Below are positions 1,605 through 21,419 of a DNA stretch of 64,000 nt, piece after piece. The DNA lies in NCBI RefSeq assembly GCF_006345805.1, contig NC_043023.1:3286001-3350000 (forward strand), in the 5' to 3' direction. Source of the stretch: Octopus sinensis. Lineage: Eukaryota. Each line of letters starts with the position of its first letter. The first letter of the stretch is position 1. The notes under the pieces are model-generated. The model was not told the origin of the DNA, did no database searches, and saw nothing but the letters and a program-made list of their open reading frames with translations. A program made the translations under genes and the position numbers.

Positions 1605-1765
1605 CTAACAGGGCTGCTGAACAGAATAATTTCCCTTCTTGAAATATTTGTAGCCGAAGAAAGGGAGTCCGAGAAGGATTGCAGCAAGGATGAATGAGCA
1701 AAAAATGATTCCGACAATCTCAAGTGCACTGAAGGTTCTTGATCCATCAGCTTCAGTTTTCGGAT
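1605..1765 (-). CDS. Terminal TM plus cytoplasmic-tail exon of the unnamed Ig-like type I membrane protein
   Basis: Acceptor ttcatcaattgcag|, phase 1. Encodes (D)PKTEADGSRTFSALEIVGIIFCSFILAAILLGLPFFGYKYFKKGNYSVQQPC*: a hydrophobic helix followed by basic residues. Phase matches the Ig-like exon donors. Confidence 0.72.
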
Positions 1766-1851
1766 CTGCAATTGATGAACAATAAAATATACAGCTACAT
1801 TTATATATTTGTTTTACAAGAATTTTGATGTGAAATCGTGTATTGAAACAG

Positions 1852-2138
1852 ATATTGTTGTATCTAGGAATGGTCATTTTGCCAGTTTAGCCAATAAAAA
1901 ATAGAGATACAAAATACAAAATGGCTGACCGTTGCTAAGGAGAGACACACAAATAAGAAAGAAGAAAGCAAAGGACCACTGATGAGGTCACAGGAGTGTG
2001 ACGAAAAAACTCTGGCTGAAATAAGATTAAGATTAATGTATAAAATAAATAACACTGAAGCAAAATAACACCAAATATATAGTGCGTGTGTTTTTATTGG
2101 CTAAACAGGCAAAATGACCATTCCTAAATACAAAAATA
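1852..2138. mobile_element. Small element bounded by about 48-bp inverted repeats
   Basis: atattgttgtatctaggaatggtcattttgccagtttagccaataaaaa is the near reverse complement of tttttattggctaaacaggcaaaatgaccattcctaaatacaaaaatat. Confidence 0.6.
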
Positions 2139-2369
2139 TATAGCCTTTGTTTTTAATAAAAAATAGTAATATCTCCCAAGCTTGACCATTTTCATATTAA
2201 CCTATTAAAAAATACTTTCGTTTCTATTATACAAATTCCAATTTAAAGTGATCTAAAGGAAAAGTCCCCATCAAAATTTCCAGTAACACTATGTTGCACA
2301 CATTAGCTTGGTAATGACAAGGTTGTTTTACTAAAATCTTCATAATTTTCAAAATTTATTCATAAGGTC

Positions 2370-2712
2370 GGTCGGTCAGAACCCCCTTCGGTCACAACAC
2401 AGACCATGGGATTGCACCTAGAAAGTTACCTTCCTAGTCGCAAGTCTGGGCAAGGCTGTTTATGGAAGACCAGCAGTCGCCCATGCATACCAGCCTCTCC
2501 TCTCCACACCACTGATGTTATCCAAGGGAAAGGCAAAGGGGCCGATACAGCTTGGCACCCGTGACGTTGCAACTCATTTCTACAGCTGAGTGAATTGGAG
2601 CAACGTGGAATAATGTGTCTTGCTCAAGGACACAACATGCAGCCTGGTCCGGGATTCAAGCTCACAACCTCACGATCGTAAGCTTGATGCTCTAACCGCT
2701 GAGCCATGCACC
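2370..2712 (-). mobile_element. tRNA-derived SINE
   Basis: Minus-strand head gcatggctcagcggttagagc...ttgaatccc with A/B-box-like motifs, then gtgtccttgagcaagacac, a motif common in SINE bodies. Confidence 0.6.
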
Positions 2713-2815
2713 TTCATACAAAAGCAATGTATTTCAACAGAAATATGGTAAGGAATAGGTTAACACAAACCAGTATCCGAGAGGAGTATATTTAAAAGAT
2801 TAGCTAATCCCCTTC

Positions 2816-3357
2816 AGATCAGTTCATCATTTAGAAGGGTTATATAGGATATGCAAAGTGGATTGACTTTCTTATTCTAGCACAGAAATGCAAGGTCAAC
2901 AGATCAGTCTATGATTTAGAAGGGTTATATAGGATATGCAAAGGGGATTGACTTTCTTATTCTAGCACAGAAATGCAAGGTCAACAGATCAGTCTATGAT
3001 TTAGAAGGGTTATATAGGATATGCAAAGGGGTTTGACTTTCTTATTCTAGCACAGAAATGCAAGGTCAACAGATCAGTCTATGATTTAGAAGGGTTATAT
3101 AGGATATGCAAAAGGGATTGACTTTCTTATTCTAGCACAGAAATGCAAGGTCAACAGATCAGTCCATGCTTTAGAAGGGTTATATAGGATATGCAAAGGG
3201 GATTGACTTTGTTATTCTAGCACAGAAATGCAAGGTCAACAGATCAGTCCATGATTTAGAAGGGTTATATAGGATATGCAAAGGGGATTGACTTTCTTAT
3301 TCTAGCACAGAAATGCAAGGTCAACAGATCAGTCCATGATTTAGAAGGGTTATATAG
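2816..3357. repeat. Minisatellite, 85-bp unit, about 6.3 copies
   Basis: ttagaagggtt recurs at 2831, 2916, 3001, 3086, 3171, 3256 and 3341. Confidence 0.95.
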
Positions 3358-3701
3358 CAAAAGCAAACACAGGGCTTCTGTCAAATTTTGCCATTAAAAA
3401 TATTTTTCTCTTCAAATTCAACCTTCATGATTAACTGGAAAATGTCACTCATTTCTATAACAATTAAATAGTACAATTGACAGATAATCCTAGGTAATGA
3501 AACTAACTAATCCATTCCTCGAACTATAAAAATATCCCGCCATGGGTTGTTATAAAGACTTATCAATTCAAAACAGAAAAGAAAAACTAAGACAGAAGTA
3601 AACCTTGAAATTGTCAAGTTACAAACTTTGAATTTGTGTAAATATTATGAAAATATTCGTGCAGCTGTTGTTGTTGTTACCATTATTATTATTATTATTC
3701 A

Positions 3702-3985
3702 GTAGTTTTATTTTTATCGCGTGCTTTCACTTCACTACTGAGCGCAGCTCTGTGTGCCTTAGGTATCTGCTGTGATTTGTTGTTATGCTCTGATGGTTAT
3801 TGTATGGAAAGTGTTCTGCGTAGGATGTGTGCAGTGCCTAGTAGTGCAATTTTCTGTATGTTATATGTGTTTGTAAGTCCTGGTGTTTTTGCTATGTATT
3901 TGTCTGAATATTTTTTTATCATGCCTAATGCAACTACTATGATAGGAATTGTTTCTGTTTTCAGATTCCACATTCTGGTTACCTC
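3702..3985 (-). mobile_element. 5'-truncated R4/Dong-like non-LTR retrotransposon inserted in (TAA)n
   Basis: Encodes EVTRMWNLKTETIPIIVVALGMIKK...IQKIALLGTAHILRRTLSIQ*, resembling the C-terminus of R4-clade elements. Flanked by (ATT)n on both sides. Confidence 0.7.
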
Positions 3986-4034
3986 TATTTTATTATTATT
4001 ATTATTATAATTATTATCATCATCATTATCATTA

Positions 4035-4595
4035 TTGAGTGAGCGAGCAGAGCATGCCATCAAAGTGACACTGGGGTAAAATATACGAAGCCCAGTATAC
4101 CCATCATGACTACCCGTCTGATAAGGGTACACCAGGCACATGCATCACAACCATATGAGCACAACATGGTGATCTCATATCAAGATAAACAGCACATGAC
4201 CTTGCAGGTGGGACCCAGTTAGAATTTTCTTCTGGTCGAGTAACCCATCCCACTCAAAAGGTCCCTGAATAAGGATTGTTTAAGGATGTTGAACGAAACA
4301 CCCATGTTTCCAAAGGTGAATTATCCAAGCCTCCAAGAATTCCTTTCAACACACGGCTATGATGCTCCCCACTACTTCTGCTCATGATCAGAGATGCACA
4401 TATCGTCAGCCACCAAGGGACATGCTCAACTGCTTAAGGTAAAAAAAACTGACAAGCAAATCTCTGGTTTTGAGCAGAATATTTGCTGTAGCCTATCTTT
4501 TATACCAAGACAAAATAATGTACATGATAACACTTCCAGTCAGTTAAGATCAGAAGCCATGAGAACCACTGCCTGGTACTGCATCAGGGCATTTA
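4035..4595 (-). mobile_element. Probable non-autonomous interspersed repeat (SINE-like) flanked by (ATT)n
   Basis: About 560-bp higher-GC block bounded by ATT/ATC microsatellites, with no coding potential. Confidence 0.4.
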
Positions 4596-5059
4596 TTATT
4601 ATTATTATTATTAATTAGGAGGGCAGAGAGGTGGCTGAATTGTTAGCATGCCAGACAAAATGCTTAGCAACATTTTGTCCATCTTTATGTTCTGAGTTCA
4701 AAATCTGCCAAAGTCTACTCTACCTTTCATCCTGCCAGGGACAATAGAATAATTATTAGTTGAGCACTGGGGTCGATGTAATCAACTTACCCTCTCCCAG
4801 CTAAAATTGCTGGCTTTGTGCCAAAATTTGAAACCATTGCTGAACCATTGGCATGCCAGGCAAAATGCTTGGCAGCATTTGATACCTGTTTACATTCTGC
4901 GCTCAAATTTCTCTGAGGTCAACTTAGCCTTTCACCCTTTACAGGTCAATGAAGTAAGTACTAGTTGGGCATTGGGGGTCGATGTAATAAGCCCCACCCC
5001 TGAAATTACTAGCATTGTGCCAAAATCTGCAAATTTACTCTTTTGATTATAACCCGGCT

Positions 5060-5715
5060 CTTTAGTACAACCTGGCTCTTTAGTACAAATATTTGGTTTT
5101 CATAAGTTTTGAATTAAAATCTTCCACCAAACCTTAGTCACAATTTATGTTCCTAACACTAGCTTAATGATAACTAAGTTATTTTACTAAACTCTTTGTT
5201 ATATTTAACCCTTTTGATACCAACCTGGCTGAAACTGCTTCTGGCTCTGTAATACAAATGTCTTGTTTTCATAAGTTTTGAATTAAAATCTTCCACCAAA
5301 CCATAGTCACAATTTATGTTCCTAACACTAGCTTAATGATAACTAAGTTATTTTACTAAATCCTTTGTTATATTTAACCTTTTGATACCAACCTGGCTGA
5401 AACCACCTCTGGCTCTGAGTACAAATGTCTTGTTTTCCTAAGTTTTGAATTAAAATCTTCCACCAAACGTTAGTCACAATTTATGTTCCTAACACTAGCT
5501 AAATTATAACCAAGCTATTTTACTAAATTCTTTGTTATATTTAACCCTTTTGATACCAACCCGGCTGAAACCACCTCTGGCTCTTTAGTACAAATATTTG
5601 GTTTTCAGAAGTTCTGAATTAAAATCTTCCACCAAACTTTAGTCACAATTTATGTTCCTAACATTAGCTTCAAGATAACAAAGTTATTTTACTAAATTCT
5701 TTATTATATTTAAAA
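5060..5715 (+). repeat. About 169-bp tandem units x4 of a TTAACCC-terminated (piggyBac-like) element
   Basis: Units carry ttaacccttttgataccaacc. The same family occurs inverted at 32995-33505. Confidence 0.7.
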
Positions 5716-6124
5716 TAATTGGAAGAAACACAGAGCAACTGAAAATAAATACAGTAACGAAAGGGTTAATATTATTTGAATGGTGGGGGAAAGTTGTGAA
5801 AACAGCAAGAGAGAATGATTCCACTTTAAGTGCCAAGCTGTGAGGGAGAGGGCACTTACCTTTGGTGTTCAAGGAGATGATTGGGTTCCTCGATTTTACA
5901 TAAGGGACCTCCTGTATTAGAAGGATCACATCAATATCATCTATTTTTTCTTCTACTGGTGTTTAATTTGTATACGTCCCTTCTTTATTTATTGTTAACC
6001 ATGTATACTTTCAATTTTTTTAATCCTTTCATATATATAAACCCCCCACACATACACCTTAAGTCTATCTTGGTATTGACCTCCTTATCCTTTGCCCTTG
6101 TGGCAATTAAAAGAAATCATTATT

Positions 6125-6530
6125 GAGAGGCTGTGTGGTAAGTAGCTTCCTTACAAACCACATGGTTCCGGGTTCATTCCCACTGCGTGACACCTTGGGC
6201 AAGTGTCTTCTACTATAGCTTCGGGCTGACCAAAGCCTTGTGAGTTGAATTGGTAGACGGAAACTGAAAGAAGCCCAACGTATATATGTATATATATATA
6301 TATATGTGTGTGTATATGTTTGTGTGTCTGTGTTTGTCCCCCCAACATCGCTTGACAACTGCTGGTGGTGTGTTTACGTCCCTGTAACTTAGCAGTTCGG
6401 CATAAGAGACCGATAGAATAAGTACTAGGCTTCCAAGGAATAAGTCCTGGGGCTGATTTGCTTGACTAAAGGTGGTGCTCCAGCATGGCCGTAGTCAAAT
6501 GACTGAAAGAAGTAAAAGAGTAAAAGAGTA
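6125..6530 (+). mobile_element. tRNA-derived SINE, full length
   Basis: Head ggctgtgtggtaagtagc...gggttcattccc, central (TA)/(TG)n, tail gtaaaagag repeats. Many copies in the window (e.g. 12865-13290, 39335-39720, 46830-47240 reverse). Confidence 0.85.
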
Positions 6531-7075
6531 ACTATCAGCTGAGTCCATTGTGAAGATGGCCCCTCTACTTTCCTTCAACCAGGAAAGGCAACCAGTTTTT
6601 TATATGCTTGAGGCCCAGGGCAAAGGGGAACATATAGTAGACATTGCTGAAAGGGCTAAAGACCAGCAGTTGTCTTTTTGTCAAAACCTTAATAATCTTT
6701 TACAGGTTTCACTTAAAGAGGAAAATCAGGATGGAGAGGTAAGTGCTGCCTTCCAATCAGTTTGTTGAAAGGTGGGTGATAGAGGTGAGCATTACCTGCG
6801 TGAATGGGCCTTCTCTCAGGGTGTACCTGTATATTGGAGAGAAAAGACTAGGAGAGGGCATCCACCCTGGTGGTCAGGGAGACCATGGATTTTGTGGGTT
6901 TTCTTTACATGTAGCCCTTGAAAGTCCCTCCACTCTCAGGGGTTTTACTTTGACTTTGTTTCATTCATTGTATGACTTTTTACATGCTAAAACCCACACT
7001 GGACCCTCCCGAATGTTTTCCTTTGTGTTCGCCCTCTGAGGTTAATAAAGAAATTATTATAAATCATTTCCTTAC

Positions 7076-7324
7076 CTTTTATCTTCAAATGAATGTCAGC
7101 AGCATTTTGGTTGTCATCATCAAATTCCCAAGTCAAACAATTCTTAGTTACGTCTTTGATAAAAAGAGTCGAAGTATTTTCAACATGTGCCACTTTATAG
7201 TAAGGGCCATCAGCGCATGTCCTGTCACATTCATATTTATAATTGTTGCACTTCCAAAACACCGGTCGTTTCATATTTGGTAATGTTATCGTCATTGTGA
7301 CGTTTCCATTGTTCACAGCAATTC
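7076..7324 (-). CDS. Ig-like ectodomain exon, copy A (249 nt, phase 1-1)
   Basis: Acceptor ttctttatttcag|, donor AAAG|gtaagg, open for 83 codons: GIAVNNGNVTMTITLPNMKRPVFWKCNNYKYECDRTCADGPYYKVAHVENTSTLFIKDVTKNCLTWEFDDDNQNAADIHLKIK. Ig fold is inferred from the strand pattern (PVxW; TLxIxDV). Confidence 0.8.
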
Positions 7325-7520
7325 CTGAAATAAAGAAATCGGTTAAGAAGTTTTCTTCACAATCATATGGTTCTGGGTTCAGTCTCACTGCACAGCACCT
7401 TGGGAAAGTGTCTTCTACTACAGCCTCAGCCTTGTGAGTGGATTTGGTAGATGGAAACTGAAAGAATCCTGTCGTGTATATGTATATACATATATGTATA
7501 TATATCTATAAAATAATATG

Positions 7521-8899
7521 TTACATTACTCAATAGTCAAGATAAAACTCTGAGTTTCAGATGCCGAAGTGGAAATCCACAACACCATCTCTTTGGTTAT
7601 CTGGCCAATTTAAAAACGCTATGGAAAAATACCGTTATATAAAGGGAAATTACTGTATTATAATTCTGCTCGCGAACCCACGTGCGTTCTTATACGTCAC
7701 TATGAAAACGTACACATCTTCACTCGCATTTTTCGCCAAATATATACGCATATATATACAACTTCATACACACACACATGTGTACCGTAAAAGTTCATAC
7801 ATACGTCTATATACGCACAAGCACAAGAAAAACCATGGTTAAAGATAACAGAAAAAAAACATAAGGAAGTATACAAAGCATAAAAACCACGTACATATAC
7901 GGATAAGCCCCTATGCACTCATACACACACACGCCCATATATGTACATACCCGCACATATTTATATACGCATACATACACACGCATATACAAAAATTGAA
8001 TATACATATCTCCACCCGCAAAAAAAAATTTTTTTAAATACTAAGTAAAAACGTCTATATATATATATACGTGCATTCTTATGCCCGCATACACACACAT
8101 ATCTAAAACTGCCCACTTATACATATTCACACATGTGTAGAAATGAACCTATATACACGTCTATATAGGCACAGGAAAAAACGCAGGATAGAAATGTACA
8201 GAAAAAATTATTATGCGTGAAAATATAAAAAATATATGAAATAATAAAAGGTATAATGAGATGAAAACTTTTTGGGACATAATATAGAAAGCATGTTCTA
8301 TCTGTTTTCTTTAGGGGACCAAAAACCTAACAACACATGTATGCGGGCATAAGAATGCACGTATATATATATATAGACGTTTTTACTTAGTATTTAAAAT
8401 AATTTTTTGGGGGGTAGGGTGGGGACATATGTATATTCAATTTTTGTATATGCGTGTATAAATATGTGCGGGTATGTACATATATGGGCGTGTGTGTGTA
8501 TGAGTGCATAGGGGCTTATCCTTATATGTACGTGGTTTTTATGCTTTGTATACTTCCTTATGTTTTTTTTCTGTTATCTTTAACCATGGTTTTTCTTGTG
8601 TTTGTGCGTATATAGACGTATGTATGAACTTTTACGGTACACATGTGTGTGTGTATGAGGCTGTATATATATGCGTGTATATTTGGCGAAAAATGCGAGT
8701 GAAGAAGTGTATGTTTCCATAGTGATGTATAAGTACGCACGTGGGTTCGTGAGCAGAGTTATAACACAGTAATTTCCCTTTATTTAACGGTATTTTTTCA
8801 TAGCATTTTTAAATTGGCCAGATAACCAAAGAGATGGTGTTGTGGATTTCCACTTCGGCATCTGAAACTCAGTTTTATCTTGACTATTGAGTAATATAA
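7521..8899. mobile_element. Foldback element with about 570-bp inverted arms and about 235-bp spacer
   Basis: 7521-8100 is the near reverse complement of 8335-8899. Termini ttacattactcaatagtcaag / cttgactattgagtaatataa. Confidence 0.9.
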
Positions 8900-9560: not shown

Positions 9561-10878
9561 TGGCCAGCTCTGGCCTCTCCCATCTAACCTACAATGTCAT
9601 TCCAAAAATTCATCATCGTATCATTGAAATCTCAAAGCTACGAGATATTCCATGATCAATTCAAACCAATGTGAATAAATAAGGATTACATTTCACTGAA
9701 TTATCTGAATGCTAAAGGGTCAATATTTTTGCTCTTGGAAATTAAAAGGGAAAATGTGCAATAGAGACCATCAAAAGAAATTAGACATCTTATTACACTT
9801 AGACTAACGAGTTTTAATTTAATGAGATTTATGTTTATTGGGACATGATTTCATCAGACATGGGTGTACGCCTGATTAAACCATGTCACTTTCCACTTAC
9901 ACCCACCCCACTTATTTTAACCTCTCAGCACCTGGTATAAAGCCACCACACTCACTGCTATGCTCTTCGGTCGGGGCTTTTTCCTTCCGCTTCCTTTGTC
10001 TTTAAAGTTACTTGGCGACCTACTAGTGTTGGTGGCAAGTAAAAATGCCTCCAACTACTCTGTAAAATGGTTGGCATTGAAAAGGAGGAATGAATTCTGC
10101 ATGAAACATCATCATCATCGTTTAACATCCATTTTCCATGCTAGCATGGGTTGGACGGTTCGACCGGGATCTGGGAAGCCAGGAGGCTGCACCAAGCTCC
10201 AGTATGATCTGGCAGAGTTTCTACAGCTGGATGCCCTTCCTAAACGCCAACCACTCCGTGAGTGTATTGGATGCTTTTTATGTGCCAGGGGAGGCTGGTA
10301 ACGGCCACGATCGGTTGGTGGTTTTTACGTGCCACCGACATGGACCCCAGTCAAGGCGGGGCTGGCATCAGCCACGTACAGATGGTGCTTTTTACTTGCC
10401 ACCGGCACAGGTGCCATGACTGATGATGACAAACATCATAACCACAATCCGATTCAGAACGACTGTAATAATCGCAGCTACATGGTAACCAAATGAGTGG
10501 TGGTGCAATGAAGAAAAGCAGCCACTACATGTGGTAAAGTGGTGGGTGTTAGGACGGCCATGAAGCAATAGAAGCCTTGCCAATGCATGGAATGGAGTTC
10601 ACCACAATGCTGTGGTGTGTTGGATTCATAGCAAAATTGAAGGTGTCAGTCCTATATGGACCCCCACAAACCATCATGACCCTGGTCGAAAACCACTGTT
10701 GCAGTACATTCCCTGATGTGCATTTTTGGCTCTTTAGCCTTTCTCAATGGTCAAATTAAAAATTTAAAGAAATCAAAAATCAAAAGATTGGCTAAAAGTT
10801 ATGAGTTAAGGGAAAGAAATAGAAGACAGAATTGAAAAGGTAATGTCTTGGAGAGAAAGGGTTTGTTAATCCACTTAC

Positions 10879-10917
10879 CAATTTCGGTGATTTCCTTAGG
10901 ATACGTATTTGTCAAAC
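10879..10917 (-). CDS. 39-nt mini-exon 1, (C)LTNTYPKEITEI(G)
   Basis: Acceptor tttgtttccattttttacag|, donor G|gtaagt, phase 1-1. Joins the leader exon to Ig exon A in frame and avoids the TGA a direct junction would create. Confidence 0.78.
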
Positions 10918-12240
10918 CTGTAAAAAATGGAAACAAAAATGTTTGATTTTAAGATGATATAATTCAAAATAAGGTGAATAAAAGAACATTATATTTCACA
11001 GTAATCTGATTGCTAAAGGATTAAACCAGCCATATCTGTTTTATGTTTGAACTAGCCACATCCACCCTCTCACACCTACCCTACAATGTCAGTCTAAAAA
11101 TAAACAATCACATCAAAATGTCAAAACTACAAGATAATGAATGATTATTTCAAAAACCAGGAGGGAGGAAGTAGGTAGCTTAATGTGGGTGTGTTGACCC
11201 AAGGAGGGGTAAGAAGAGATAGCCAGATGAGGATGATGGAGGTGGGGTGATCAAGGTATTGAAAGAAGCAGAAGTGGAAAATTGGGAGATGAGCGGGAGG
11301 AGTGAGAGGAAAAGTATTTTCAAGGGTGGTCATTGTTGGGTATGACAATAGATGTTAATAGTTAGGGATGGTGGCACTATAGAACTAAGGGAAATTGGAA
11401 AGGTGGAAGATGGGAGAGGCGAGTATTAAAGGGAGAGAAAGGGTCCACTTACAGATGCTAGTAGTGTAACAAAGGGGAAATCTGAAAAATGAAGATGGGT
11501 TGGTGGCACATCAAAGTACAGAGGTATGTAGACATGTATGAGTAAATAGAGGGAGTTGGTAGCAACAGTAGGAGTAGGTAGTACTAAGTGGTTTGGTTCT
11601 ATTTGAAGAAGAAGATCAGATAAGAATTCAAAGTGTGAGGACGGGGTGGTTGTAAAGATGTATGTGCTGGGTAGCAGGAATGTGCAAAGGTAATCTTTAA
11701 AAATATTTAGAATGGGGGAGGTGGTAATAGTGGAAGTGATATGTTGTTAGTACAACAAAGTTGTAACTTAAGGTTAATCATAAAGAATTACATAGATTTG
11801 ACATAATAGGCAAACAAGGAATAGGTTCTGTGTTTACATGAGAGGATTACATCTGAAAATTTATTAAATAATTAGGGCTTGTGGTTTTGAAAGATAGTGG
11901 ATGATTCTCATACACAGTGCCAAGATTAGTGTTGTATGGGGTGGGCGGGTAGAATATAGGGAATGTTTTGGGACCTGAGGTTCTGTATATAATTTGTTAA
12001 TGAGGTAGATAATTTATAAGTTTAATTGTGGCGGAAAATCAAAAAATTTCCAAAATTTTCTTCCATAGAATGCATCATTTCTAAAGCTCTGCTAAAAACG
12101 AAATTGGAAAAATCCCAGTCCAAACAAAGAAAATCCACCTTATGTGAGTGACCTATTCTAGAACTCTGGGCACTCGAGTAAGTTTGCCTTAACAAAAATA
12201 ACTTGTGGAAAAAATAAAATAAAATAAAAATAAAACTTAC

Positions 12241-12313
12241 AGAAAAATGTTGCAAGCAAATAGCAGAACAAGGTCCAAACAGCCTTGATCTGGTGGGTGA
12301 GAGAGGTGAGCAT
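12241..12313 (-). CDS. Signal-peptide exon, (MLTSLTHQ)IKAVWTLFCYLLATFF
   Basis: Donor T|gtaagt, phase 1, with a hydrophobic h-region. The part above about 12291 comes from the duplicated intron, so the ATG at 12313 is junction-derived and uncertain. Confidence 0.6.
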
Positions 12314-12595
12314 TACCTGAGTGAATGGGCCTTCTCTTAGTGTATACCTGTATATTGAAGAGAAAAGACTGGGGAGGGCATCCACCCTGGTGGTCAGGGA
12401 GACCATGGATTTTGTGGGATTTCTTTATGTGTGGCGCTTGAAAGTCCCCCCATTCTCAGGGGTTTTACTTTGACTTTGTTTCATTCATTGTATGACATTT
12501 TACATGCTAAAACCCACACTGGACCCTCCCGAATGTTTTCCTTTGTGTTCGCCCTCTGAGGTTAATAAAGAAATTATTATAAATCATTTCCTTAC

Positions 12596-12844
12596 TGTTT
12601 ATCTTCAAATGATTGTCTGCAGCATTTTGGTTGTCTTCATCAAATTTCCAAGTCAAACATTTCTTAGTTACATCTTTGATCCAAAGCGTGGGAGTACCTC
12701 CACTATTTGCCACTTTATAGTCAGGGCCATCAGCGCATATCCTGTCACATTCATATTTATAATTGTGGAACCACCAAACCACCGGTTGTCTAATGTTTGG
12801 TATTTTTATCCTAAGGATGAAATTTCGATTGCGCACAGCAATTC
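12596..12844 (-). CDS. Ig-like ectodomain exon, copy B (249 nt, phase 1-1)
   Basis: Same splice sites as copy A. GIAVRNRNFILRIKIPNIRQPVVWWFHNYKYECDRICADGPDYKVANSGGTPTLWIKDVTKKCLTWKFDEDNQNAADNHLKIN. No stops or indels. Confidence 0.8.
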
Positions 12845-14562
12845 CTGAAATAAAGAAATCAGTTAAGAAGTTTTCTCTACAATTATATGGTTCTGGGTTC
12901 AGTCCCACTGCACAGCACCTTGGGAAAGTGTCTTCTACTACAGCCTCAGCCTTGTGAGTGGATTTGGTAGATGGAAACTGAAAGAAGCCTGTCGTGTATA
13001 TGTATATACATATAGGTAAATATAAATATATACACACATATATATATATGTGTGTGTGTGTGGTGTTTGTGTGTGTGTTTGTGTGTCTGTGTTTGTTCCC
13101 CCAACATAGCTTGACAACCGATGCTGGTGTGTTCATGCCCCCGTAACTTAGCGGTTTGGCAAAAGGGTCTGATAGAATAAGTACTAGGCTTACAAAGAAT
13201 AAGTCCTGGGGTTCATTTGCTCGACTAAAGGTGGTGCTCCAGCATGGCCGCAGTCAAATGAGTAAAACAAGTAAAAGAGTAAAGAGTAAAGGGTATATAT
13301 ATAAATAGAAAATTTCAAAGCTATGAGATATTCCATGATCAATTCAAACCAATGTGGATAAATAAGGATTACATTTCACTGAATTATCTGAATGCTAAAG
13401 GGTTAATGTTTTTGCCCTTGGAAATTAAAAGGGAAAATGTGCAATAGAGACCATCAAAAGAAATTAGACATCTTATTACACTTAGACTAACGAGTTTTAA
13501 TTTAATGAGATTTATGTTTATTGGGACATGATTTCATCAGACATGGGTGTACGCCTGATTAAACCATGTCACTTTCCACTTACACCCACCCCACTTATTT
13601 TAACCTCTCAGCACCTGGTATAAAGCCACCACACTCACTGCTATGCTCTTCGGTTGGGGCTTATTCCTTCCGCTTCCTTTTTCTTTATAGTTACTTGGCG
13701 ACCTACTAGTGTTGGTGGCGAGTAAAAATGCCTCCAAGTACTCTGTAAAATGGTTGGCATTAAAAAGTAGGAATGAATTCTGCATGAAACGTCATCATCA
13801 TCGTTTAACATCCGTTTTCCATGCTAGCATGGATTGGACGGTTCGACCGGGATCTGGGAAGCCAGGAGGCTGCACCAGGATCCAGTGTGATCTGGCAGAG
13901 TTTCTACAGCTGGATGCCCTTCCTAAACGCCAACCACTACGTGAGTGTAGTGGTTACTTTTTATGTGCCAGGGGAGGCTGGCAACGACCATGATCGGTTG
14001 GTGGTTTTTACGTGCCACCGACATGGACCCCAGTCAAGGCGGCACTGGCATCGGCCACGTACAGATGGTGCTTCTTACGTGCCACTGGCACAGGTGCCAT
14101 GACTGATGATGACAAACATCACAACCACAGTCCTATTCAGAACGACTGTCATAATCACTGCTACATGGTAACCAAATGAGTGGTGGTGCAATGAAGAAAA
14201 GCAGCCACTACATGTGGTAAAGTGGTGGGTGCTAGGAGGGCCATGAAGCAATAGAAGCCTTGCCAATGCATGGAATGGAGTTCACCACAATGCTGTGGTG
14301 TGTTGGATTCATAGCAAAATTGAAGGTGTCAGTCCTATATAGGACCCCCACAAACCATCATGACCCTGGTCGAAAACCACTGTTGCAGTACATTCCCTGA
14401 TGTGCATTTTTGGCTCTTTAGCCTTTCTCAATGGTCAAATTAAAAATTTAAAGAAATCAAAAATCAAAAGATTGGCTAAAAGTTATGAGTTAAGGGAAAG
14501 AAATAGAAGACAGAATTGAAAAGGTAATGTCTTGGAGAGAAAAGGTTTGTTAATCCACTTAC

Positions 14563-14601
14563 CAATTTCGGTGATTTCCTTAGGATACGTATTTGTCAAA
14601 C
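14563..14601 (-). CDS. 39-nt mini-exon 2, (C)LTNTYPKEITEI
   Basis: Identical to mini-exon 1, intact AG/GT. Confidence 0.65.
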
Positions 14602-16763
14602 CTGTAAAAAATGAAAACAAAAACGTTTGATTTTAAGATGATATAATTCAAAATAATGTGAATAAAAGAACATTATATTTCACAGTAATCTGATTGCTAA
14701 AGGATTAAACCTGCCATATTAAACCAGCCATATCTGTTTTATGTTTGAAGTAGCCACATCCACCCTCTCACACCTACCCTACAATGTCAGTCTAAAAATA
14801 AACAATCACATCATCAAAATGTCAAAACTACAAGATAATGAATGATTAATTCAAAAACCAGGAGGGAGGAAGTAGGTAGCTTAATGTGGGTGTGTTGACA
14901 CAAGGAGGGGTAAGAAGAGATAGGCAGATGAGGAAGATGGAGGTGAGGTGATCAGGGGATTGAAAGAAGTAGAAGTGGAAAATTGGGAGATGAGTGGGAG
15001 GTGTGAGAGGAAAAGTATTTTCAAGGGTGGTCATTGTTGGGTATGACAATAGATGTTAATAGTTAGGGATGGTGGCACTATAGAACTAAGGGAAATTGGA
15101 AAGGTGGAAGATGGGAGAGGCGAGTATTAAAGGGAGAGAAAGGGTCCACTTACAGATGCTGGTAGTGTAGTAAGGGGAAATCTGAAAGATGAAGATGGGT
15201 CGGCGGCACATCAAAGTACAGAGGTATGTAGACATGTATGAGTAAATAGAGGGAGTTGGTAACAAAAGTAGGAGTAGGTAGTACTAAGTGGTTTGGTTCT
15301 ACTTGAAGAAGAAGATCAGATAAGAATTCAAAGTGTGAGGACGGGGTTGTAAAGATGTATGTGCTGGGTAGCAGGAATGTGCAAAGGTAATCTTAAAAAA
15401 TATTTAGAATGGGGGAGGTGGTAATAGTGGAAGTGATATGTTGTTAGTACAACAAAGTTGTAACTTAAGGTTAATCATAAAGAATTACATAGATTTAACA
15501 TAATAGGCAAACAAGGATTAGGTTCTGTGTTTACATGAGAGGATTACATCTGAAAATTTATTAAATAATTAGGGGTTGTGGTTTTGAAAGATAGTGGATG
15601 ATTCTCATACACAGTGCCAAGATTAGTATTGTATGGGGTGGGTGGGTGTGAGGGCTCACTGTTAATTAACCAGGGTAGAATATAGGGAATGTTTTGGGAC
15701 CTGAGCTTCTGTATATAATTTGTTAATGATGTAGTTAATTTATAAGTTGGATTGTGGTGGAAAATCAAAAATGTTCCAAAATTTTCTTCCATAAAATGCA
15801 TCATTTCTAAAGCTCAGCTCAAAACAAAATTGGAAAAATCCCTACTGAAACAAAGAAAATCCACCTTACGTGAGTGACCTATTCCAGACCTCTGTGCACT
15901 TGAGTAAGATTGCCTTAACAAAAATATCCTACCCCACTTATTTTAACCTCTCAGCACCTGGTATAAAGCCACCACCCTCACTGCTATGCTCTTCGGTCGG
16001 GGCTTTTTCCTTCCGTGTCCTTTGTCTTTATTGTTACTAGGCGACCTACTAGTGTTGGTGCCTGGCTCCAGTCTGATCTGGCAGAGTTTCTATAGCTGTT
16101 TGCCCTTCCTAAACACCAACCACTCCGTGAGTGTAGTGGGTGCTTTTTATGTGCCACCAGCACAGGTGCCAGGGGAGGTTCGCAACGGCCACGATCGGTT
16201 GGTGGTTTTTACGTGCCACCGACATGGAAGCCAGTCAAGGCGGTGCTGGCATCGGCCACGTACAGATGGTGCTTCTTACATGCCACTGGCACAGGTGCCA
16301 TGACTGATGATGACAAACATCACAACCACAGTCCTATTCAGAACGACTGTCATAATCACTGCTACATGGTAACCAATGAGTGGTGTGTGCAATGAAGAAA
16401 AGCAGCCACTACATGTGGTAAAGTGGTGGGTGCTAGGAGGGCCATGAAGCAATAGCAAAGCCTGCCAATGCATGGAATGGAGTTCACCACAATGCTGTGG
16501 TGTGTTGGATTCATAGCAAAATTGAAGGTGTCAGTCCTATATGGACCCCCACAAACCATCATGACCCTGGTCGAAAACCACTGTTGCAGTACATTCCCTG
16601 ATGTGCATTTTTGGCTCTTTAGCCTTTCTCAGTGGTCAAATTAAAAATTTAAAGAAATCAAAAATCAAAAGATTGGCTAAAAGTTATGAGTTAAGGGAAA
16701 GAAATAGAAGACAGAATTGAAAAGGTAATGTCTTGGAGAGAAAAGGTTTGTTAATCCACTTAC

Positions 16764-16802
16764 CACTTTCGGTGATTTCATCAGTATATGCATTTGTCAA
16801 AC
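16764..16802 (-). CDS. 39-nt mini-exon 3, (C)LTNAYTDEITES
   Basis: Intact splice sites. 6 nt differ from mini-exon 2, all in codons that change amino acid. Confidence 0.6.
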
Positions 16803-18944
16803 CTGTAAAAAATGAAATCAAAAATGTTTGATTTTAAGATGATATAATTCAAAATAATGTGAATAAAAGAACATTATATTTCACAGTAATCTGATTGCTA
16901 AAGGATTAAACCAGCCATATCTGTTTTATGTTTGAAGTAGCCACATCCACCCTCTCACACCTACCCTACAATGTCAGTCTAAAAATAAACAATCACATCA
17001 TCAAAATGTCAAAACTACAAGATAATGAATGATTAATTCAAAAACCAGGAGGCAGGAAGTAGGTAGCTCAATGTGGGTGTGTTGACCCAAGGAGGGGTAA
17101 GAAGAGATAGCCAGATGAGGATGATGGAGGTGGGGTGATCAGGGTATTGAAAGAAGTAGAAGTGGAAAATTGGGAGATGAGTGGGAGGAGTGAGAGGAAA
17201 AGTATTTTCAAGGGTGGTCATTGTTGGGTATGATAATAGATGTTAATAGTTAGGGATGGTGGCACTATAGAACTATGGGAAATTGGAAAGGTGGAAGATG
17301 GGAGAGGCGAGTATTAAGGGAGAGAAAGGGTCCACTTACAGATGCTAGTAGTGTAATAAAGGGGAATCTGAAAGATAGATGAAGATGGGTCGGCGGCACA
17401 TCAAAGTACAGAGGTATGTAGACATGTATGAGTAAATAGAGGGAGTTTGTAGCAAAAGTAGGAGTAGGTGGTACTAAGTGGTTTGGTTCTACTTGAAGAA
17501 GAAGATCAGATAAGAATTCAAAGTGTGAGGACGGGGTGGTTGTAAAGATGTATGTGCTGGGTAGCAGGAATGTGCAAAGGTAATCTTAAGAAATATTTAG
17601 AATGGGGGAGGTGGTAATAGTGGAAGTGATATGTCGTTAGTGCAACTAAGTTGTAACTTAAGGTTAATCATAAAGAATTACATAGATTTGACATAATAGG
17701 CAAACAAGGATTAGGTTCTGTGTTTACATGAGAGGATTACATCTGAAAATTTATTAAATAATTAGGGGTTGTGGTTTTGAAAGATAGTGGATGATTCTCA
17801 TACACAGTGCCAAGATTAGTGTTGAAAGGGGTGGGTGGTGTGAGGGCTCACTGTTAATTACCAGGGTAGATATGAATGGGAAGTGGGAATGGCGACAAAG
17901 GTATTATAAGGGGATGAGTTAAAATGTGGTGAAAATATGTTAAGGTAGTTAAAAATTGGATTGTGGTGGAAAATCAAAAATGTTCCAAAATTTTCTTCCA
18001 TAAAATGCATCATTCTAAGCTGCTAAAAACAAAATGGAAAAATCCCTACTGAAACAAAGAAAATCCACCTTACGTGAGTGACCTATTCCAGACCTCTGTG
18101 CACTTGAGTAAGATTGCCTTAACAAAAATATCCTACCCCACTTATTTTAACTCTCAGCACCTGGTATAAAGCCACCACCCTCACTGCTATGCTCTTCGGT
18201 CGGGGCATTTTCCTTCCGCTTCCTTTGTCTTTATTGTTTAGGCGACCTACTAGTGTTGGTGCCTGGCTCTAGTCTGATCTGGCAGAGTTTCTATAGCTGT
18301 TTGCCTTCCTAAACACCAACCACTCCGTGAGTGTAGTGGATGCTTTTTATGTGCCAGGGGAGGCTCGCAACGGCCACGATCGGTTGGTGGTTTTTACGTG
18401 CCACCGACATGGAAGCCAGTCAAGGCGGGGCTGGCATCGGCCACGTACAGATGGTGCTTTTTACATGCCACCAGCACAGGTGCCATGACTGATGATGACA
18501 AACATCATAACCACAATCCTATTAAGAACGACTGTAATAATCGCAGCTGCATGGTAACCAAATGAGTGGTGGTGCAATGAAGAAAAGCAGCCACTACATG
18601 TGGTAAAGTGGTGGGTGCTAGGAGGGCCATGAAGCAATAGAAGGCTTGCCAATGCATGGAATGGAGTTCACTACAATGCTGTGGCTTGTTGGATCCATAG
18701 CAAAATTGAAGGTGTCAGTCCTATATGGACCCCCACAAACCATCATGACCCTGGTCGAAAACCACTGTTGCAGTACATTCCCTGATGTGCATTTTTGGCT
18801 CTTTAGCCTTTCTCAATGGTCAAATTAGAAATTTAAAGAAATCAAAAATCAAAAGATTGGCTAAAAGTTATGAGTTAAGGAAAGAAATACAGACAGAATT
18901 GAAAAGGTAATGTCTTGGAGAGAAAAGGTTGTTAATCCACTTAC

Positions 18945-18983
18945 CACTTTCGGTGATTTCATCAGTATATGTATTTGTCAAAC
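18945..18983 (-). CDS. 39-nt mini-exon 4, (C)LTNTYTDEITES
   Basis: Intact splice sites, open frame. Confidence 0.55.
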
Positions 18984-21128
18984 CTGTAAAAATGAAATCA
19001 AAAATGTTTGATTTTAAGATGATATAATTCAAAATAATGTGAATAAAAGAATATTATATTTCACAGTAATCTGATTGCTAAAGGATTAAACCAGCCATAT
19101 CTGTTTTATGTTTGAACTAGCCACATCCACCCTCTCACACCTACCCTACAATGTCAGTCCAAAAATAAACAAGTCTAAAAATAAACAATCACATCATCAA
19201 AATGTCAAAACTACAAGATAATGAATGATTAATTCAAAAACCAGGAGGGAGGAAGTAGGTAGCTCAATGTGGGTGTGTTGACCCAAGGAGGGGTAAGAAG
19301 AGATAGCCAGATGAGGATGATGGAGGTGTGGTGATCAAGGTATTGAAAGAAGCAGAAGTGGAAAATTGGGAGATGAGTGGGAGGAGTGAGAGGAAAAGTA
19401 TTTTCAAGGGTGGTCATTGTTGGGTATGATAATAGATGTTAATAGTTAGGGATGGTGGCACTATAGAACTAAGGGAAATTGGAAAGGTGGAAGATGGGAG
19501 AGGCGAGTATTAAAGGGAGAGAAAGGGTCCACTTACAGATGCTAGTAGTGTAATAAAGGGGAAATCTGAAAGATGAAGATGGGTCGGCGGCACATCAAAG
19601 TACAGAGGTATGTAGACATGTATGAGTAAATAGAGGGAGTTTGTAGCAAAAGTAGGAGTAGGTGGTACTAAGTGGTTTGGTTCTACTTGAAGAAGAAGAT
19701 CAGATAAGAATTCAAAGTGTGAGGACGGGGTGGTTGTAAAGATGTATGTGCTGGGTAGCAGGAATGTGCAAAGGTAATCTTAAGAAATATTTAGAATGGG
19801 GGAGGTGGTAATAGTGGAAGTGATATGTCGTTAGTGCAACTAAGTTGTAACTTAAGGTTAATCATAAAGAATTACATAGATTTGACATAATAGGCAAACA
19901 AGGATTAGGTTCTGTGTTTACATGAGAGGATTACATCTGAAAATTTATTAAATAATTAGGGGTTGTGGTTTTGAAAGATAGTGGATGATTCTCATACACA
20001 GTGCCAAGATTAGTGTTGAAAGGGGTGGGTGGGTGTGAGGGCTCACTGTTAATTAACCAGGGTAGAATATAGGGAATGTTTTGGGACCTGAGGTTTTGTA
20101 TATAATTTGTTAATGAGGTAGTTAATTTATAAGTTGGATTGTGGTGGAAAATCAAAAATGTTCCAAAATTTTCTTCCATAAAATGCATCATTTCTAAAGC
20201 TCAGCTCAAAACAAAATTGGAAAAATCCCTACTGAAACAAAGAAAATCCACCTTACGTGAGTGACCTATTCCAGACCTCTGTGCACTTGAGTAAGATTGC
20301 CTTAACAAAAATATCCTACCCCACTTATTTTAACCTCTCAGCACCTGGTATAAAGCCACCACCTTCACTGCTATGCTCTTCGGTCGGGGCTTTTTCCTTC
20401 CGCTTCCTTTGTCTTTATTGTTACTAGGCGACCTACTAGTGTTGGTGCCTGGCTCTAGTCTGATCTGGCAGAGTTTCTATAGCTGTTTGCCCTTCCTAAA
20501 CACCAACCACTCCGTGAGTGTAGTGGATGCTTTTTATGTGCCAGGGGAGGCTCGCAACGGCCACGATCGGTTGGTGGTTTTTACGTGCCACCGACATGGA
20601 AGCCAGTCAAGGCGGGGCTGGCATCGGCCACGTACAGATGGTGCTTTTTACATGCCACCAGCACAAGTGCCATAAGTGATGATGACAAACATCATAACCA
20701 CAATCCTATTAAGAACGACTGTAATAATCGCAGCTACATGGTAACCAAATGAGTGGTGGTGCAATGAAGAAAAGCAGCCACTACATGTGGTAAAGCGGTG
20801 GGTGCTAGGAGGGCCATGAGCAATAGAAGGCTTGCCAATGCATGGAATGGAGTTCACTACAATGCTGTGGCTTGTTGGATCCATAGCAGAATTGAAGGTG
20901 TCAGTCCTATATGACCCCACAAACCATCATGACCCTGGTCGAAAACCCTGTTGCAGTACATTCCCTGATGTGCATTTTTGGCTCTTTAGCCTTTCTCAAA
21001 GGTTAAATAAAAATTTAAAGAAATCAAAGTCAAAAGATTGGCTAAAAGTTATGAGTTAAGGGAAAGAAATAGAAGACAGAATTGAAAAGGTAATGTCTTG
21101 GAGAGAAAAGGTTTGTTAATCCACTTAC

Positions 21129-21167
21129 CAATTTCGGTGATTTCCTTAGGATACGTATTTGTGAAAA
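21129..21167 (-). CDS. 39-nt mini-exon 5, (F)FTNTYPKEITEI
   Basis: Acceptor ttttcattctttacag|, donor G|gtaagt, open frame. Confidence 0.6.
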
Positions 21168-21419
21168 CTGTAAAGAATGAAAACAAAAACGTTTGATTTT
21201 AAGATGATATAATTCAAAATAATGTGAATAAAAGAACATTATATTTCACAGTAATCTGATTGCTAAAGGATTAAGCCAGCCATATCTGTTTTATGTTTGA
21301 ACTAGCCACATCCACCCTCTCACACCTACCCTACAATGTCAGTCCAAAAATAAACAAGTCTAAAAATAAACAATCACATCATCAAAATGTCAAAACTACA
21401 AGATAATGAATGATTAATT

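What the first reader, a model, noticed from the sequence alone, without database searches (positions are those of the whole stretch)
1605..21419. Hidden minus-strand gene for a small Ig-like type I membrane receptor, spread across the repeat array
Four exon types join with canonical GT-AG sites and matching phase 1: leader 12313-12241, mini-exon 10917-10879, ectodomain 7324-7076, TM/tail 1765-1605. The CDS is 522 nt (173 aa): ...IKAVWTLFCYLLATFFCLTNT/YPKEITEIGIAVNNGNVTMTI...WKC...ECDRTCADG...TLFIKDVT...HLKIKDPK...ALEIVGIIFCSFILAAILLGLPFFGYKYFKKGNYSVQQPC. The leader would hit TGA if spliced directly to the ectodomain exon, and the 39-nt exon rescues the frame, which supports the model. I do not recognise the family. 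The strand pattern suggests an Ig V/I-like domain lacking the canonical B-F disulfide, with a CxxxC motif instead. This looks like a lineage-specific recognition receptor.
Basis: partly seen in the sequence, partly recalled or inferred. Interest (0 to 1): 0.92.

Follow-up and report, generated by a model that had tools for sequence, protein, structure and literature searches.

The report
Octopus Ig-like membrane gene, mis-modelled start
The exons are real and belong to a large, fast-diversifying, octopus-only family of small cell-surface proteins with an unusual immunoglobulin-like domain, but the proposed first exon is probably wrong and a second domain exon was missed.

Summary
All four exons sit at the stated coordinates with GT-AG sites and phase 1, and they give the stated 173-aa product. 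The window is Octopus sinensis.

Three exon types are genuine: the 39-nt linker, the 249-nt domain exon and the TM/tail exon. The domain has at least 83 mostly open copies in this genome. Relatives occur in O. vulgaris, O. bimaculoides and Argonauta, all labelled "uncharacterized".

With its linker, the domain is predicted (pLDDT 85) as an 8-strand Ig-like sandwich. The best structural matches are titin, obscurin and CD58.

Three points do not hold:
- **Missed exon.** A second intact domain exon (12845-12597) was overlooked.
- **Leader.** The "leader" is an internal relic leader exon (12289-12241). Its ATG is AAG here but ATG in O. vulgaris.
- **Likely gene.** The O. vulgaris ortholog is modelled as a two-module protein. 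Its true 5' exons fall in the assembly gap at 21420-21519.

A new result is that exons diverge faster than their introns, with omega about 1.9 among recent paralogs. Function is unknown and no transcript data were available.

The parts
21420..21519 (.). Assembly gap (100 N). By collinearity it replaces about 5.3 kb that in O. vulgaris carries the 5'UTR exon A and the true leader exon B (ATGATGGAC..., 49 nt).
   Evidence: N run. Window 26017-21520 matches L031 18817-23325 and window 21419... matches L031 28612.... Exons A and B sit at L031 ~24718-24794 and 27444-27492. They have no match in the window.
9627..21419 (.). 2.19-kb tandem repeat array of at least 5 units. It is interrupted at 12201-13309 by the domain'/relic-leader segment. 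Each unit carries one linker mini-exon and a SINE-like piece.
   Evidence: Self-BLAST at 91-94% identity with period ~2186. The same array is present in O. vulgaris with one unit fewer upstream of the first domain exon.
21129..21167 (-). Linker mini-exon copy 1 (FTNTYPKEITEIG), 39 nt, phase 1-1, AG/GT. It is the type used directly after the leader in the O. vulgaris model.
18945..18983 (-). Linker mini-exon copy 2 (LTNTYTDEITESG), with intact splice sites. Its use in a transcript is unknown.
16764..16802 (-). Linker mini-exon copy 3 (LTNAYTDEITESG), with intact splice sites. Its use in a transcript is unknown.
14563..14601 (-). Linker mini-exon copy 4 (LTNTYPKEITEIG), with intact splice sites. 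Its use in a transcript is unknown.
12597..12845 (-). Domain exon' (module 1), 249 nt, phase 1-1. Acceptor is tttcag|, donor is CA|gtaagg, and the frame is open. It encodes GIAVRNRNFILRIKIPNIRQPVVWWFHNYKYECDRICADG....
   Evidence: It differs from O. vulgaris P0001 module 1 at 4 of 249 nt.
12290..12313 (-). This is intron sequence upstream of the relic leader's acceptor; 22 of the 24 nt (12313-12292) lie inside the duplicated 740-bp segment.
   Evidence: The paralogous copy at 6792-6771 has the same ATG followed by unrelated sequence.
12241..12289 (-). Internal relic leader exon B', 49 nt, cag| acceptor, |gtaagt donor. It reads ATC AAG GCT... here and ATC ATG GCT... (IMAVWTLFCYLLATFF) in O. vulgaris. 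It is homologous to paralog leaders such as MAKWILFCLLFVTF.
10879..10917 (-). It encodes the inter-module linker and most of predicted strand A of module 2.
7076..7324 (-). It encodes the Ig-like domain with WKC...YECDRTC...KNC.
1605..1765 (-). TM/tail exon with a TAG stop. It encodes a stalk, a hydrophobic helix and a 16-aa tail (GYKYFKKGNYSVQQPC).
   Evidence: The O. vulgaris ortholog differs by 15 substitutions plus a 15-nt in-frame length difference, and keeps the same stop.
6771..7510 (.). One copy of a 740-bp duplication (SINE end + domain exon + ~300 nt of intron). The partner copy is at 12292-13030.
   Evidence: Exon identity is 83.1% versus 95% in the flanks.

Best explanation
Window 1605-21419 (minus strand) holds most of one member of an octopod-specific multigene family. 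The family encodes small type I membrane glycoproteins built from non-canonical Ig-like modules.

**Module design.** Each module is encoded by two frame-neutral, phase 1-1 exons. A 39-nt linker exon supplies most of strand A. A 249-nt exon supplies the end of strand A and strands B-G. The 249-nt exon carries an invariant Trp in strand C, a CxxxC at C'/C'-D, and a second Cys pair (end of C, start of F) that is almost always present or absent together. A final exon supplies the stalk, one TM helix and a ~16-aa tail.

**Most likely product at this locus (inferred).** The product is a two-module protein: leader (lost in the assembly gap at 21420-21519), then linker 21167-21129, domain' 12845-12597, linker 10917-10879, domain 7324-7076, and TM 1765-1605. 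This matches the model for the collinear O. vulgaris ortholog.

It is an internal relic leader exon left by the duplication that added the second module. It must be skipped, because including its 49 nt would shift the frame. In O. sinensis it has lost its ATG.

**Function (inferred).** The protein is probably a cell-surface recognition or adhesion molecule. The family is being diversified: exons diverge faster than their flanking introns, and omega exceeds 1 among recent paralogs. With no signalling domain in the tail, any signal would need a partner protein.

**Shown here:** exon anatomy, family membership, predicted fold, taxonomic distribution, and divergence pattern.
**Inferred only:** which exons are joined in real transcripts, the signal peptide, membrane topology, disulfide pairing, and function.
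For: **Exon anatomy and translation:**

**Family.**
- At least 83 domain-exon matches in the genome, clustered on the same scaffold (C27, mainly 16.1-16.6 Mb).
- Annotated relatives have 1-4 modules plus a TM.

**Ortholog.** O. vulgaris locus L031 is collinear at 95-97% identity. P0001 uses leader, linker, domain', linker, domain and TM.

**Relic leader.** Same 49-nt length. Its downstream intron is 94% identical to that of the true leader. The start codon is ATG in O. vulgaris and AAG here.

**Fold.**
- AF2 pLDDT 85, pTM 0.77, 8 strands.
- Foldseek gives 92 hits at E<=1e-3: titin M1 1.6e-5, CD58 domain 1 2.9e-5, obscurin TM-score 0.66-0.72.
- The only PDB sequence hit is titin, at E 2.2.
- I-set scores 23.6 bits in the 4-module paralog.

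**Cysteine pattern:** alignments.

**Membrane features:** hydropathy peak 2.67 at residues 129-160, and sequons N45 and N87.

**Diversification.**
- Window duplicate: exon 83.1% versus flanks 95% identity, p=5e-7.
- Local alignment: exon divergence exceeds flank divergence in 44 of 47 paralog pairs.
- Global alignment: median dN 0.181, dS 0.112, intron K 0.120. dN exceeds intron K in 69 of 88 pairs (30 at p<0.01), and dN exceeds dS in 67 of 88.
- Linker exons diverge 10.8% versus 1.6% for their flanks.
- ML omega is 1.94 for 14 close paralogs. Against omega=1, 2dlnL=12.8.
Against: - No transcript evidence of any kind was available, so the exon joining is by homology to a computational O. vulgaris model. 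That model is itself partly chimeric: its first exon is MRPS21 exon 1 read out of frame.
- RefSeq's own O. sinensis model (P0003) joins the 7324-7076 exon to exons of the next family gene about 100 kb away. It skips the 1765-1605 TM exon.
- The true leader of this gene is not in the assembly.
- Module 1 has lost one Cys of the co-varying pair, leaving an unpaired Cys. This could signal decay.
- Omega over all 23 sequences is 0.68, not above 1.
- Gene conversion or mosaic exchange among tandem paralogs can mimic exon-accelerated divergence, and paralog pairs are not independent.
- The window protein has no Pfam hit at all.
- The structure is a prediction, made on the O. vulgaris ortholog's module (96% identical).
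Confidence: 0.6

Rival explanations
1. The reader's model is correct as an independent transcript. An internal promoter upstream of 12313 gives a one-module 173-aa protein (12313-12241 / 10917-10879 / 7324-7076 / 1765-1605) that uses the upstream ATG.
For: - The ORF and splice sites are intact.
- The N-terminus has a signal-like hydrophobic core.
- The 49-nt core is a genuine family leader exon, and in O. vulgaris it keeps its own ATG. There, a one-module product MAVWTLF...-linker-domain-TM is fully plausible.
- One-module family members exist, such as P0015 and P0016.
Against: - In the window the canonical start is AAG.
- The substitute ATG lies in duplicated intron sequence upstream of the exon's own acceptor. 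Family leader exons are normally entered by splicing from a 5'UTR exon, which would exclude that ATG.
- The O. vulgaris annotation skips this exon.
- This exact protein is absent from the 15-billion-protein collection.
Confidence: 0.15
2. RefSeq's structure is right. The 7324-7076 exon belongs to a long gene (LOC115225442) whose 3' part (linker, domain, TM) lies about 100 kb downstream on C27. The 1765-1605 exon is then unused or belongs to another isoform.
For: P0003 equals window 7295-7077 at 100% identity, followed by a linker, the domain of locus L015 (C27:3192363-3192614) and a different TM. All junctions are phase 1, so such joins are in frame.
Against: - The model starts at an internal Met with no signal peptide.
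- It passes over an intact TM exon with a conserved stop that the O. vulgaris ortholog model uses.
- It also passes over a separate leader-type exon at C27:3215728.
- Automatic models in this family are demonstrably chimeric elsewhere. Examples are the H2B fusions P0004 and P0005 and the MRPS21 fusion P0001.
Confidence: 0.1
3. The locus is a decaying or non-functional copy in O. sinensis. The open frames are simply young duplicates that have not yet accumulated stops.
For: - The internal leader has lost its start codon.
- Module 1 has an unpaired Cys.
- The between-species changes in the two domain exons are 6 non-synonymous and 1 synonymous.
- The TM exon has diverged strongly between species.
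Against: - All eleven exon copies keep AG/GT borders and open frames in both species.
- The TM-exon length difference is in frame and the stop is conserved.
- Exons changing faster than neutral flanks is not what relaxed constraint alone gives.
Confidence: 0.12

Closest known systems
Octopus vulgaris 'Hypothetical predicted protein' P0001 (300 aa, GCA_951406725.2, OX597842.1)
   Same: It is the ortholog. The locus is collinear at 95-97% identity. Differences are 4/249 nt in module 1 and 3/249 nt in module 2. It has the same tandem linker array and the same TM exon position.
   Different: It has one array unit fewer. Its internal leader keeps ATG. Its TM exon is 15 nt longer and carries 15 substitutions. 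Its annotated N-terminus is an out-of-frame MRPS21 exon plus a translated 5'UTR exon.
Octopus sinensis RefSeq LOC115225442 (XP_029652262.2, P0003), LOC115225115 (P0006, 4 modules) and LOC115225116 (P0002, 2 modules)
   Same: Same family and same exon design. P0003 contains the window's domain exon at 100% identity. Multi-module proteins with one or two linker exons between modules are the norm in this family.
   Different: P0003 omits the window's TM exon, module 1 and any leader. All of these entries are named only 'uncharacterized protein', and no paper mentioning the LOC ids was found.
Ig superfamily I-set/V-set domains, especially those without the B-F disulfide (CD2/CD58 N-terminal domains) and titin/obscurin I-set domains
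   Same: The predicted 8-strand sandwich superposes at TM-score 0.6-0.7 with E down to 1.6e-5. It has a conserved Trp in strand C and an E-F 'STLxIxxV...W.F.D.N' motif.
   Different: - No Pfam Ig model matches the window protein.
- There is no Cys in strand B or at the canonical F position.
- Instead there is a CxxxC at C'/C'-D and a co-varying Cys pair at the C end and F start.
- Sequence identity to any solved Ig domain is only 12-20%.
Haliotis rufescens uncharacterized LOC124119024 (P0028; 5 repeats + TM)
   Same: It is a type I membrane protein with repeated ~95-aa modules carrying CxxxC, 'STLTIhsV' and 'tW.i.D.N' motifs. The profile hit has E 3e-14 and hhalign aligns 49 columns. The whole protein scores 56.8 bits on I-set.
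   Different: The hhalign probability is only 61%, the N-terminal half of the module differs, and homology versus convergence within Ig-like domains is not settled.
Diversified multigene Ig-type surface receptor families (vertebrate KIR/LILR/NITR, snail FREPs, amphioxus VCBPs) - an analogy drawn from general knowledge, not tested
   Same: The evolutionary mode is similar: tandem clusters, birth-and-death duplication, modular phase-1 Ig exons, and elevated dN/dS.
   Different: There is no sequence relationship, no ITIM/ITAM or charged TM residue, no attached fibrinogen or chitin-binding domain, and no expression or ligand data.

Membership tests
Immunoglobulin superfamily (Ig-like domain) | Greek-key beta-sandwich of 7-9 strands | tested here: met
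   This is a prediction only. AF2 gives pLDDT 85 and pTM 0.77 with strands A, B, C, C', D, E, F and G. Foldseek returns 92 PDB hits at E<=1e-3, and all those listed are Ig-like. The exon-only model without strand A was weak: pLDDT 75, best E 0.04.
Immunoglobulin superfamily (Ig-like domain) | Canonical disulfide between strands B and F | tested here: not met
   There is no Cys in predicted strand B (VTMTIT) or at the F-strand core position (LTWEF). The cysteines lie at the C end, at C'/C'-D (CxxxC), and just before F.
Immunoglobulin superfamily (Ig-like domain) | Conserved Trp in strand C | tested here: met
   The Trp is invariant in 23 paralogs (W24 of A1) and at least 90% conserved in 29 modules (W39 of A3). 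It lies in predicted strand C.
Immunoglobulin superfamily (Ig-like domain) | Match to a curated Ig profile (Pfam I-set, V-set, Ig_3) above threshold | tested here: not met
   The window protein has no Pfam family at E<=10. The 4-module paralog P0006 scores 23.6 bits against the 23.7-bit I-set cut-off.
Octopod LOC115225115/115225116-type family (unnamed, uncharacterized) | ~83-aa domain with P-N-M-K-R-P-x-x-W, Y-E-C-D-R-T-C, S-T-L-W-I and T-W-x-F-x-D-D-N motifs | tested here: met
   The window domains are 52-75% identical to 21 paralogs and carry the invariant P, W, C, C, Y, V, I, F, N and L positions. Profile hits range from E 1e-173 to 1e-20 against octopod proteins.
Octopod LOC115225115/115225116-type family (unnamed, uncharacterized) | Exon design: 49-nt leader, 39-nt linker, 249-nt domain exon and TM/tail exon, all phase 1 | tested here: met
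   Protein junctions in P0001, P0002, P0004 and P0006 agree.
Type I single-pass membrane protein | Cleavable N-terminal signal peptide | tested here: inconclusive
   The relic leader is hydrophobic (KD 1.72) and homologous to paralog leaders, but it lacks its start codon here. The likely real leader lies in the assembly gap. No signal-peptide predictor was available.
Type I single-pass membrane protein | One C-terminal TM helix, short cytosolic tail, N-glycosylation sequons in the ectodomain | tested here: met
   The hydropathy peak is 2.67 over residues 129-160. The tail is 16 aa. Sequons are NVT and NTS in the domain. This is sequence-level evidence only.
HYR_4C (PF23237) / HYR domains | Full-length profile similarity to the HYR-like 4-Cys domain | tested here: not met
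   Bacterial HYR_4C repeat proteins appeared in the profile search. However, hhalign aligns only 15 columns (the TW.F.D.N.N motif) at 48% probability. The window protein has no Pfam hit.
   There is no Pfam hit. The relatives are leader+TM proteins. The only RT-like ORF nearby (21554-22459, + strand) is separate.

The most novel reading that the evidence does not exclude
The family is an octopod-specific, rapidly diversifying repertoire of Ig-like surface receptors, for immune-type, self/non-self or gamete/cell recognition. Variety would come from three sources: duplication of frame-neutral exon modules, exon-targeted diversifying selection or micro-conversion, and possibly combinatorial or alternative joining of tandem leader-linker-domain units to shared downstream TM exons. 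This would be functionally analogous to KIR/NITR-type or clustered variable-exon systems in a lineage with no known diversified Ig receptors.
Probability: 0.25. Interest if true: 0.8.

Novelty: new variant of a known kind. Interest (0 to 1): 0.55.

Why it matters
Cephalopods lack adaptive immunity, and their known lineage-specific expansions (protocadherins, zinc fingers, GPCRs, chemotactile receptors) are central to ideas about their biology.

This would be an unreported family of at least 80 modules. It encodes small Ig-like membrane proteins, is confined to octopods, and has exons that evolve faster than their introns (omega about 1.9). That makes it a concrete candidate for a diversified recognition system, and its expression and binding can be tested directly.

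At the practical level, the locus shows how tandem paralogs, an assembly gap and frame-neutral exons mislead both a human reader and two automatic annotations. The result was three different, partly chimeric gene models for one locus.

Tried and rejected
- **Pfam scan** of the 173-aa model: nothing at E<=10.
- **PDB sequence profile search:** only titin at E 2.2.
- **AF2 on the 249-nt exon alone:** a mediocre model (pLDDT 75) with non-significant Foldseek hits. Adding the linker, which supplies strand A, fixed this.
- **AF2 on the spliced window protein:** The 96%-identical O. vulgaris module was used as the target instead.
- **Homology to bacterial HYR_4C repeats:** rejected. Only a 15-column motif aligns, at 48% probability.
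- **Unplaced scaffold C9316 as the missing 5' end of this gene:** rejected. It carries a different leader (IMGISNLLKVVLLFSIIYF) and its own TM exon, has no domain exon, and is not collinear.
- **Search for the true leader in the window:** absent.
- **Locus look-up for RefSeq P0003:** not on record.
- **Literature searches** by LOC ids and by topic: no paper on this family.
- **Global omega over all 23 paralogs:** 0.68, not above 1. The omega>1 claim is therefore limited to the recently expanded clade.

Full report
**1. Observation**

They are 12313-12241 (73 nt), 10917-10879 (39 nt), 7324-7076 (249 nt) and 1765-1605 (161 nt, ending in TAG).
- Each internal border has AG and GT.
- Every junction is phase 1.
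- The joined 522-nt CDS gives the quoted 173-aa protein.
- A direct leader-to-domain join creates T|GA.

The window is G000:C27:3286001-3350000 of a 2.72-Gb assembly. It is Octopus sinensis. RefSeq XP_029652262.2 (LOC115225442) matches the 7324-7076 exon at 100% identity and lies on a contig of the same length as C27.

**2. Repeat context**

A 2.19-kb tandem array runs from 9627 to 21419 and stops at a 100-N assembly gap at 21420-21519.

It carries five copies of the 39-nt exon, at 21167-21129, 18983-18945, 16802-16764, 14601-14563 and 10917-10879. All have intact AG/GT borders and an open frame.

A 740-bp duplication links 6771-7510 with 12292-13030. It contains a second, intact 249-nt domain exon at 12845-12597, with acceptor tttcag|, donor CA|gtaagg and phase 1-1.

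**3. Family**

- The domain plus TM query finds at least 83 places in the same genome. Nearly all are free of stops. Most lie on C27 at 16.1-16.6 Mb.
- Database relatives are all 'uncharacterized' or 'hypothetical' proteins. They come from O. sinensis, O. vulgaris, O. bimaculoides and Argonauta hians.
- These proteins share one architecture: leader, then one to four (linker + domain) modules, then a TM and a short GYKYF-type tail.
- One weak relative is a Haliotis rufescens protein with five repeats and a TM. The profile E-value is 3e-14, and hhalign aligns 49 columns at 61% probability.
- Bacterial HYR_4C repeat proteins also surfaced, but only a 15-column motif aligns, so I reject homology.
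- Pfam finds nothing in the window protein.
- No paper mentioning the family's LOC ids was found. Topic searches also gave nothing relevant.

**4. Ortholog and corrected gene model**

The O. vulgaris locus L031 is collinear with the window at 95-97% identity. Its annotated protein P0001 reads:
- leader MMDLFKLVLLLLMTCAV
- linker FTNTYPKEITEIG
- domain', equivalent to window 12845-12597
- linker
- domain, equivalent to window 7324-7076
- TM exon, equivalent to window 1765-1605

Its 5'UTR exon (L031 ~24718-24794) and its 49-nt leader exon (27444-27492) fall in the L031 interval 23325-28612. That interval has no counterpart in the window and corresponds to the N gap.

The first 8 residues of P0001 (MLLTGHWT) are MRPS21 exon 1 read out of frame (window 36325-36302). 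That model is therefore itself chimeric at its 5' end.

**5.

The last 49 nt (12289-12241) are a true family leader exon, for four reasons:
- It has the same length as the O. vulgaris leader.
- It has its own cag| acceptor.
- The 68 nt of intron after its donor are 94% identical to the intron after the true O. vulgaris leader.
- Its peptide AVWTLFCYLLATF resembles paralog leaders such as AKWILFCLLFVTF.

In O. vulgaris this internal exon reads ATC ATG GCT. In the window it reads ATC AAG GCT, and this is the only difference in 49 nt.

The other copy (6792-6771) has the same ATG followed by unrelated sequence.

If the 49-nt exon were included after domain', it would shift the frame, so it must be skipped in a two-module transcript.

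In O. sinensis it needs an undocumented internal promoter.

RefSeq's P0003 starts at the first in-frame Met inside the domain exon. This is what one expects when no upstream start is available. It then jumps to the next family gene about 100 kb away (its second domain is locus L015) and skips the 1765-1605 exon.

I could not obtain transcript evidence, so the choice among models rests on homology.

**6. Fold**

- The exon-only AF2 model was mediocre: pLDDT 75, best Foldseek E 0.04.
- With the linker included and 29 aligned modules, the target being the O. vulgaris module (96% identical to the window's), the model reached pLDDT 85 and pTM 0.77.
- Its strands are A 12-19, B 24-29, C 37-41, C' 44-48, D 58-63, E 66-71, F 80-84 and G 90-98. 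The linker exon supplies the first five residues of strand A; the last three come from the domain exon.
- Foldseek gave 92 PDB hits at E<=1e-3, all Ig-like among those listed. The best are titin M1 (1.6e-5), CD58 domain 1 (2.9e-5) and obscurin Ig32 (TM-score 0.66/0.72).
- There is no Cys in strand B or at the core position of strand F.
- The invariant cysteines are the CxxxC (YECDRTC) at C'/C'-D.
- The WKC and K-x-C cysteines are gained and lost together across paralogs, which suggests a C-F disulfide.
- Hydropathy shows one strong TM segment, and the ectodomain has two N-glycosylation sequons.

**7. Divergence pattern (new)**

- Within the window's 740-bp duplication, the exon is 83.1% identical (42/249 mismatches). 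The flanks are about 95% identical (25/490 mismatches). Fisher p is 5e-7.
- Among the five linker copies, exon divergence is 10.8% versus 1.6% in 250-nt flanks.
- With local alignment, 44 of 47 paralog pairs with alignable flanks show more divergence in the exon than in the flanks.
- With global alignment, median dN is 0.181, dS 0.112 and intron K 0.120. dN exceeds dS in 67 of 88 pairs. dN exceeds intron K in 69 of 88 pairs, 30 of them at p<0.01.
- ML codon models give omega 0.68 over all 23 sequences.
- For the 14 recently diverged paralogs, including both window exons, omega is 1.94. lnL is -1441.18 versus -1447.58 with omega fixed at 1, so 2dlnL=12.8 and p is about 3e-4.
- Between species, the two domain exons differ by 6 non-synonymous and 1 synonymous changes. 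The TM exon differs by 15 substitutions and a 15-nt in-frame length change, with the stop conserved.

Caveats: the pairs are not independent, and gene conversion or mosaicism among tandem paralogs can inflate such signals.

**8. Interpretation**

The locus encodes a member of an octopod-specific family of small type I membrane glycoproteins built from non-canonical Ig-like modules.

The most probable product here has two modules, with its real 5' exons lost in the assembly gap.

The frame-neutral exon pairs, tandem duplication and faster-than-intron exon change point to a diversifying cell-surface recognition role. The short tail implies any signalling would go through partners. Function, expression and topology remain inferred.

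**9. Verdict**

The gene model is wrong at the 5' end and misses one module. The family is already present in databases, but uncharacterized.

I rate it a new variant of a known kind (a lineage-specific Ig-superfamily branch). Interest is moderate, and comes mainly from the diversification signal.

Noticed in passing
window 36386-36300 and 32876-32709 (minus): A two-exon mitochondrial ribosomal protein S21 (MRPS21) gene lies just upstream. Exon 1 encodes MSANHMRFIARTVLVKDNQLDVAYRTLDR, and exon 2 is 59% identical to human MRPS21 residues ~30-85. The O. vulgaris model P0001 starts in exon 1 read out of frame, so it is an annotation chimera.
   Followed up: partly
window 21420-21519 and 21554-22459 (+): A 100-N assembly gap sits exactly at the upstream end of the tandem array. 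A reverse-transcriptase ORF fragment (YADD motif, LINE-like) lies immediately beyond it.
   Followed up: partly
G000:C9316 (71-kb unplaced scaffold), about 23.9-44.3 kb: This is a paralogous or rearranged copy of the locus. It has its own 5'UTR exon, a leader (IMGISNLLKVVLLFSIIYF), one 2.19-kb linker unit and a TM exon, but no domain exon. It resembles the domain-less protein P0005. It also carries about 40 copies of the 85-bp satellite.
   Followed up: partly
window 2815-3357, 5072-5713 and 32996-33505: An 85-bp satellite (6.4 copies) and a 169-bp satellite (3.8 copies) lie inside the last intron of the gene. The 169-bp satellite recurs inverted near MRPS21.
   Followed up: no
proteins P0004, P0005 (O. 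vulgaris): Two annotated family members are fused to a histone H2B N-terminal part through the family's 5'UTR exon read as coding (..LLLPE|TKFFSLFVFPSWFLKLPIASSHNYK..). These look like further chimeric gene models.
   Followed up: no
alignments A1/A3 (family-wide): The first and fourth cysteines of the domain (WKC and K-x-C) are almost always present or absent together. Some members that lack them gain a different pair (F-C-D...C-S) near strand F/G. Window module 1 keeps only the fourth, leaving an unpaired Cys.
   Followed up: partly
window 49914-50390 (+): This is an FG/Ser/Thr/Ala-rich open frame (..QPTFGATPSSSFSFS..AAFSFTPQ..). It may be part of the nucleoporin Nsp1/NUP62-like gene that flanks the O. 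vulgaris locus, where the neighbouring gene has an Nsp1_C hit.
   Followed up: no
window 7344-7510, 12864-13030 and many sites between 23 and 62 kb: Octopus SINE-like elements are abundant. One ends only ~20 nt upstream of the polypyrimidine tract of both domain exons and was co-duplicated with them.
   Followed up: no
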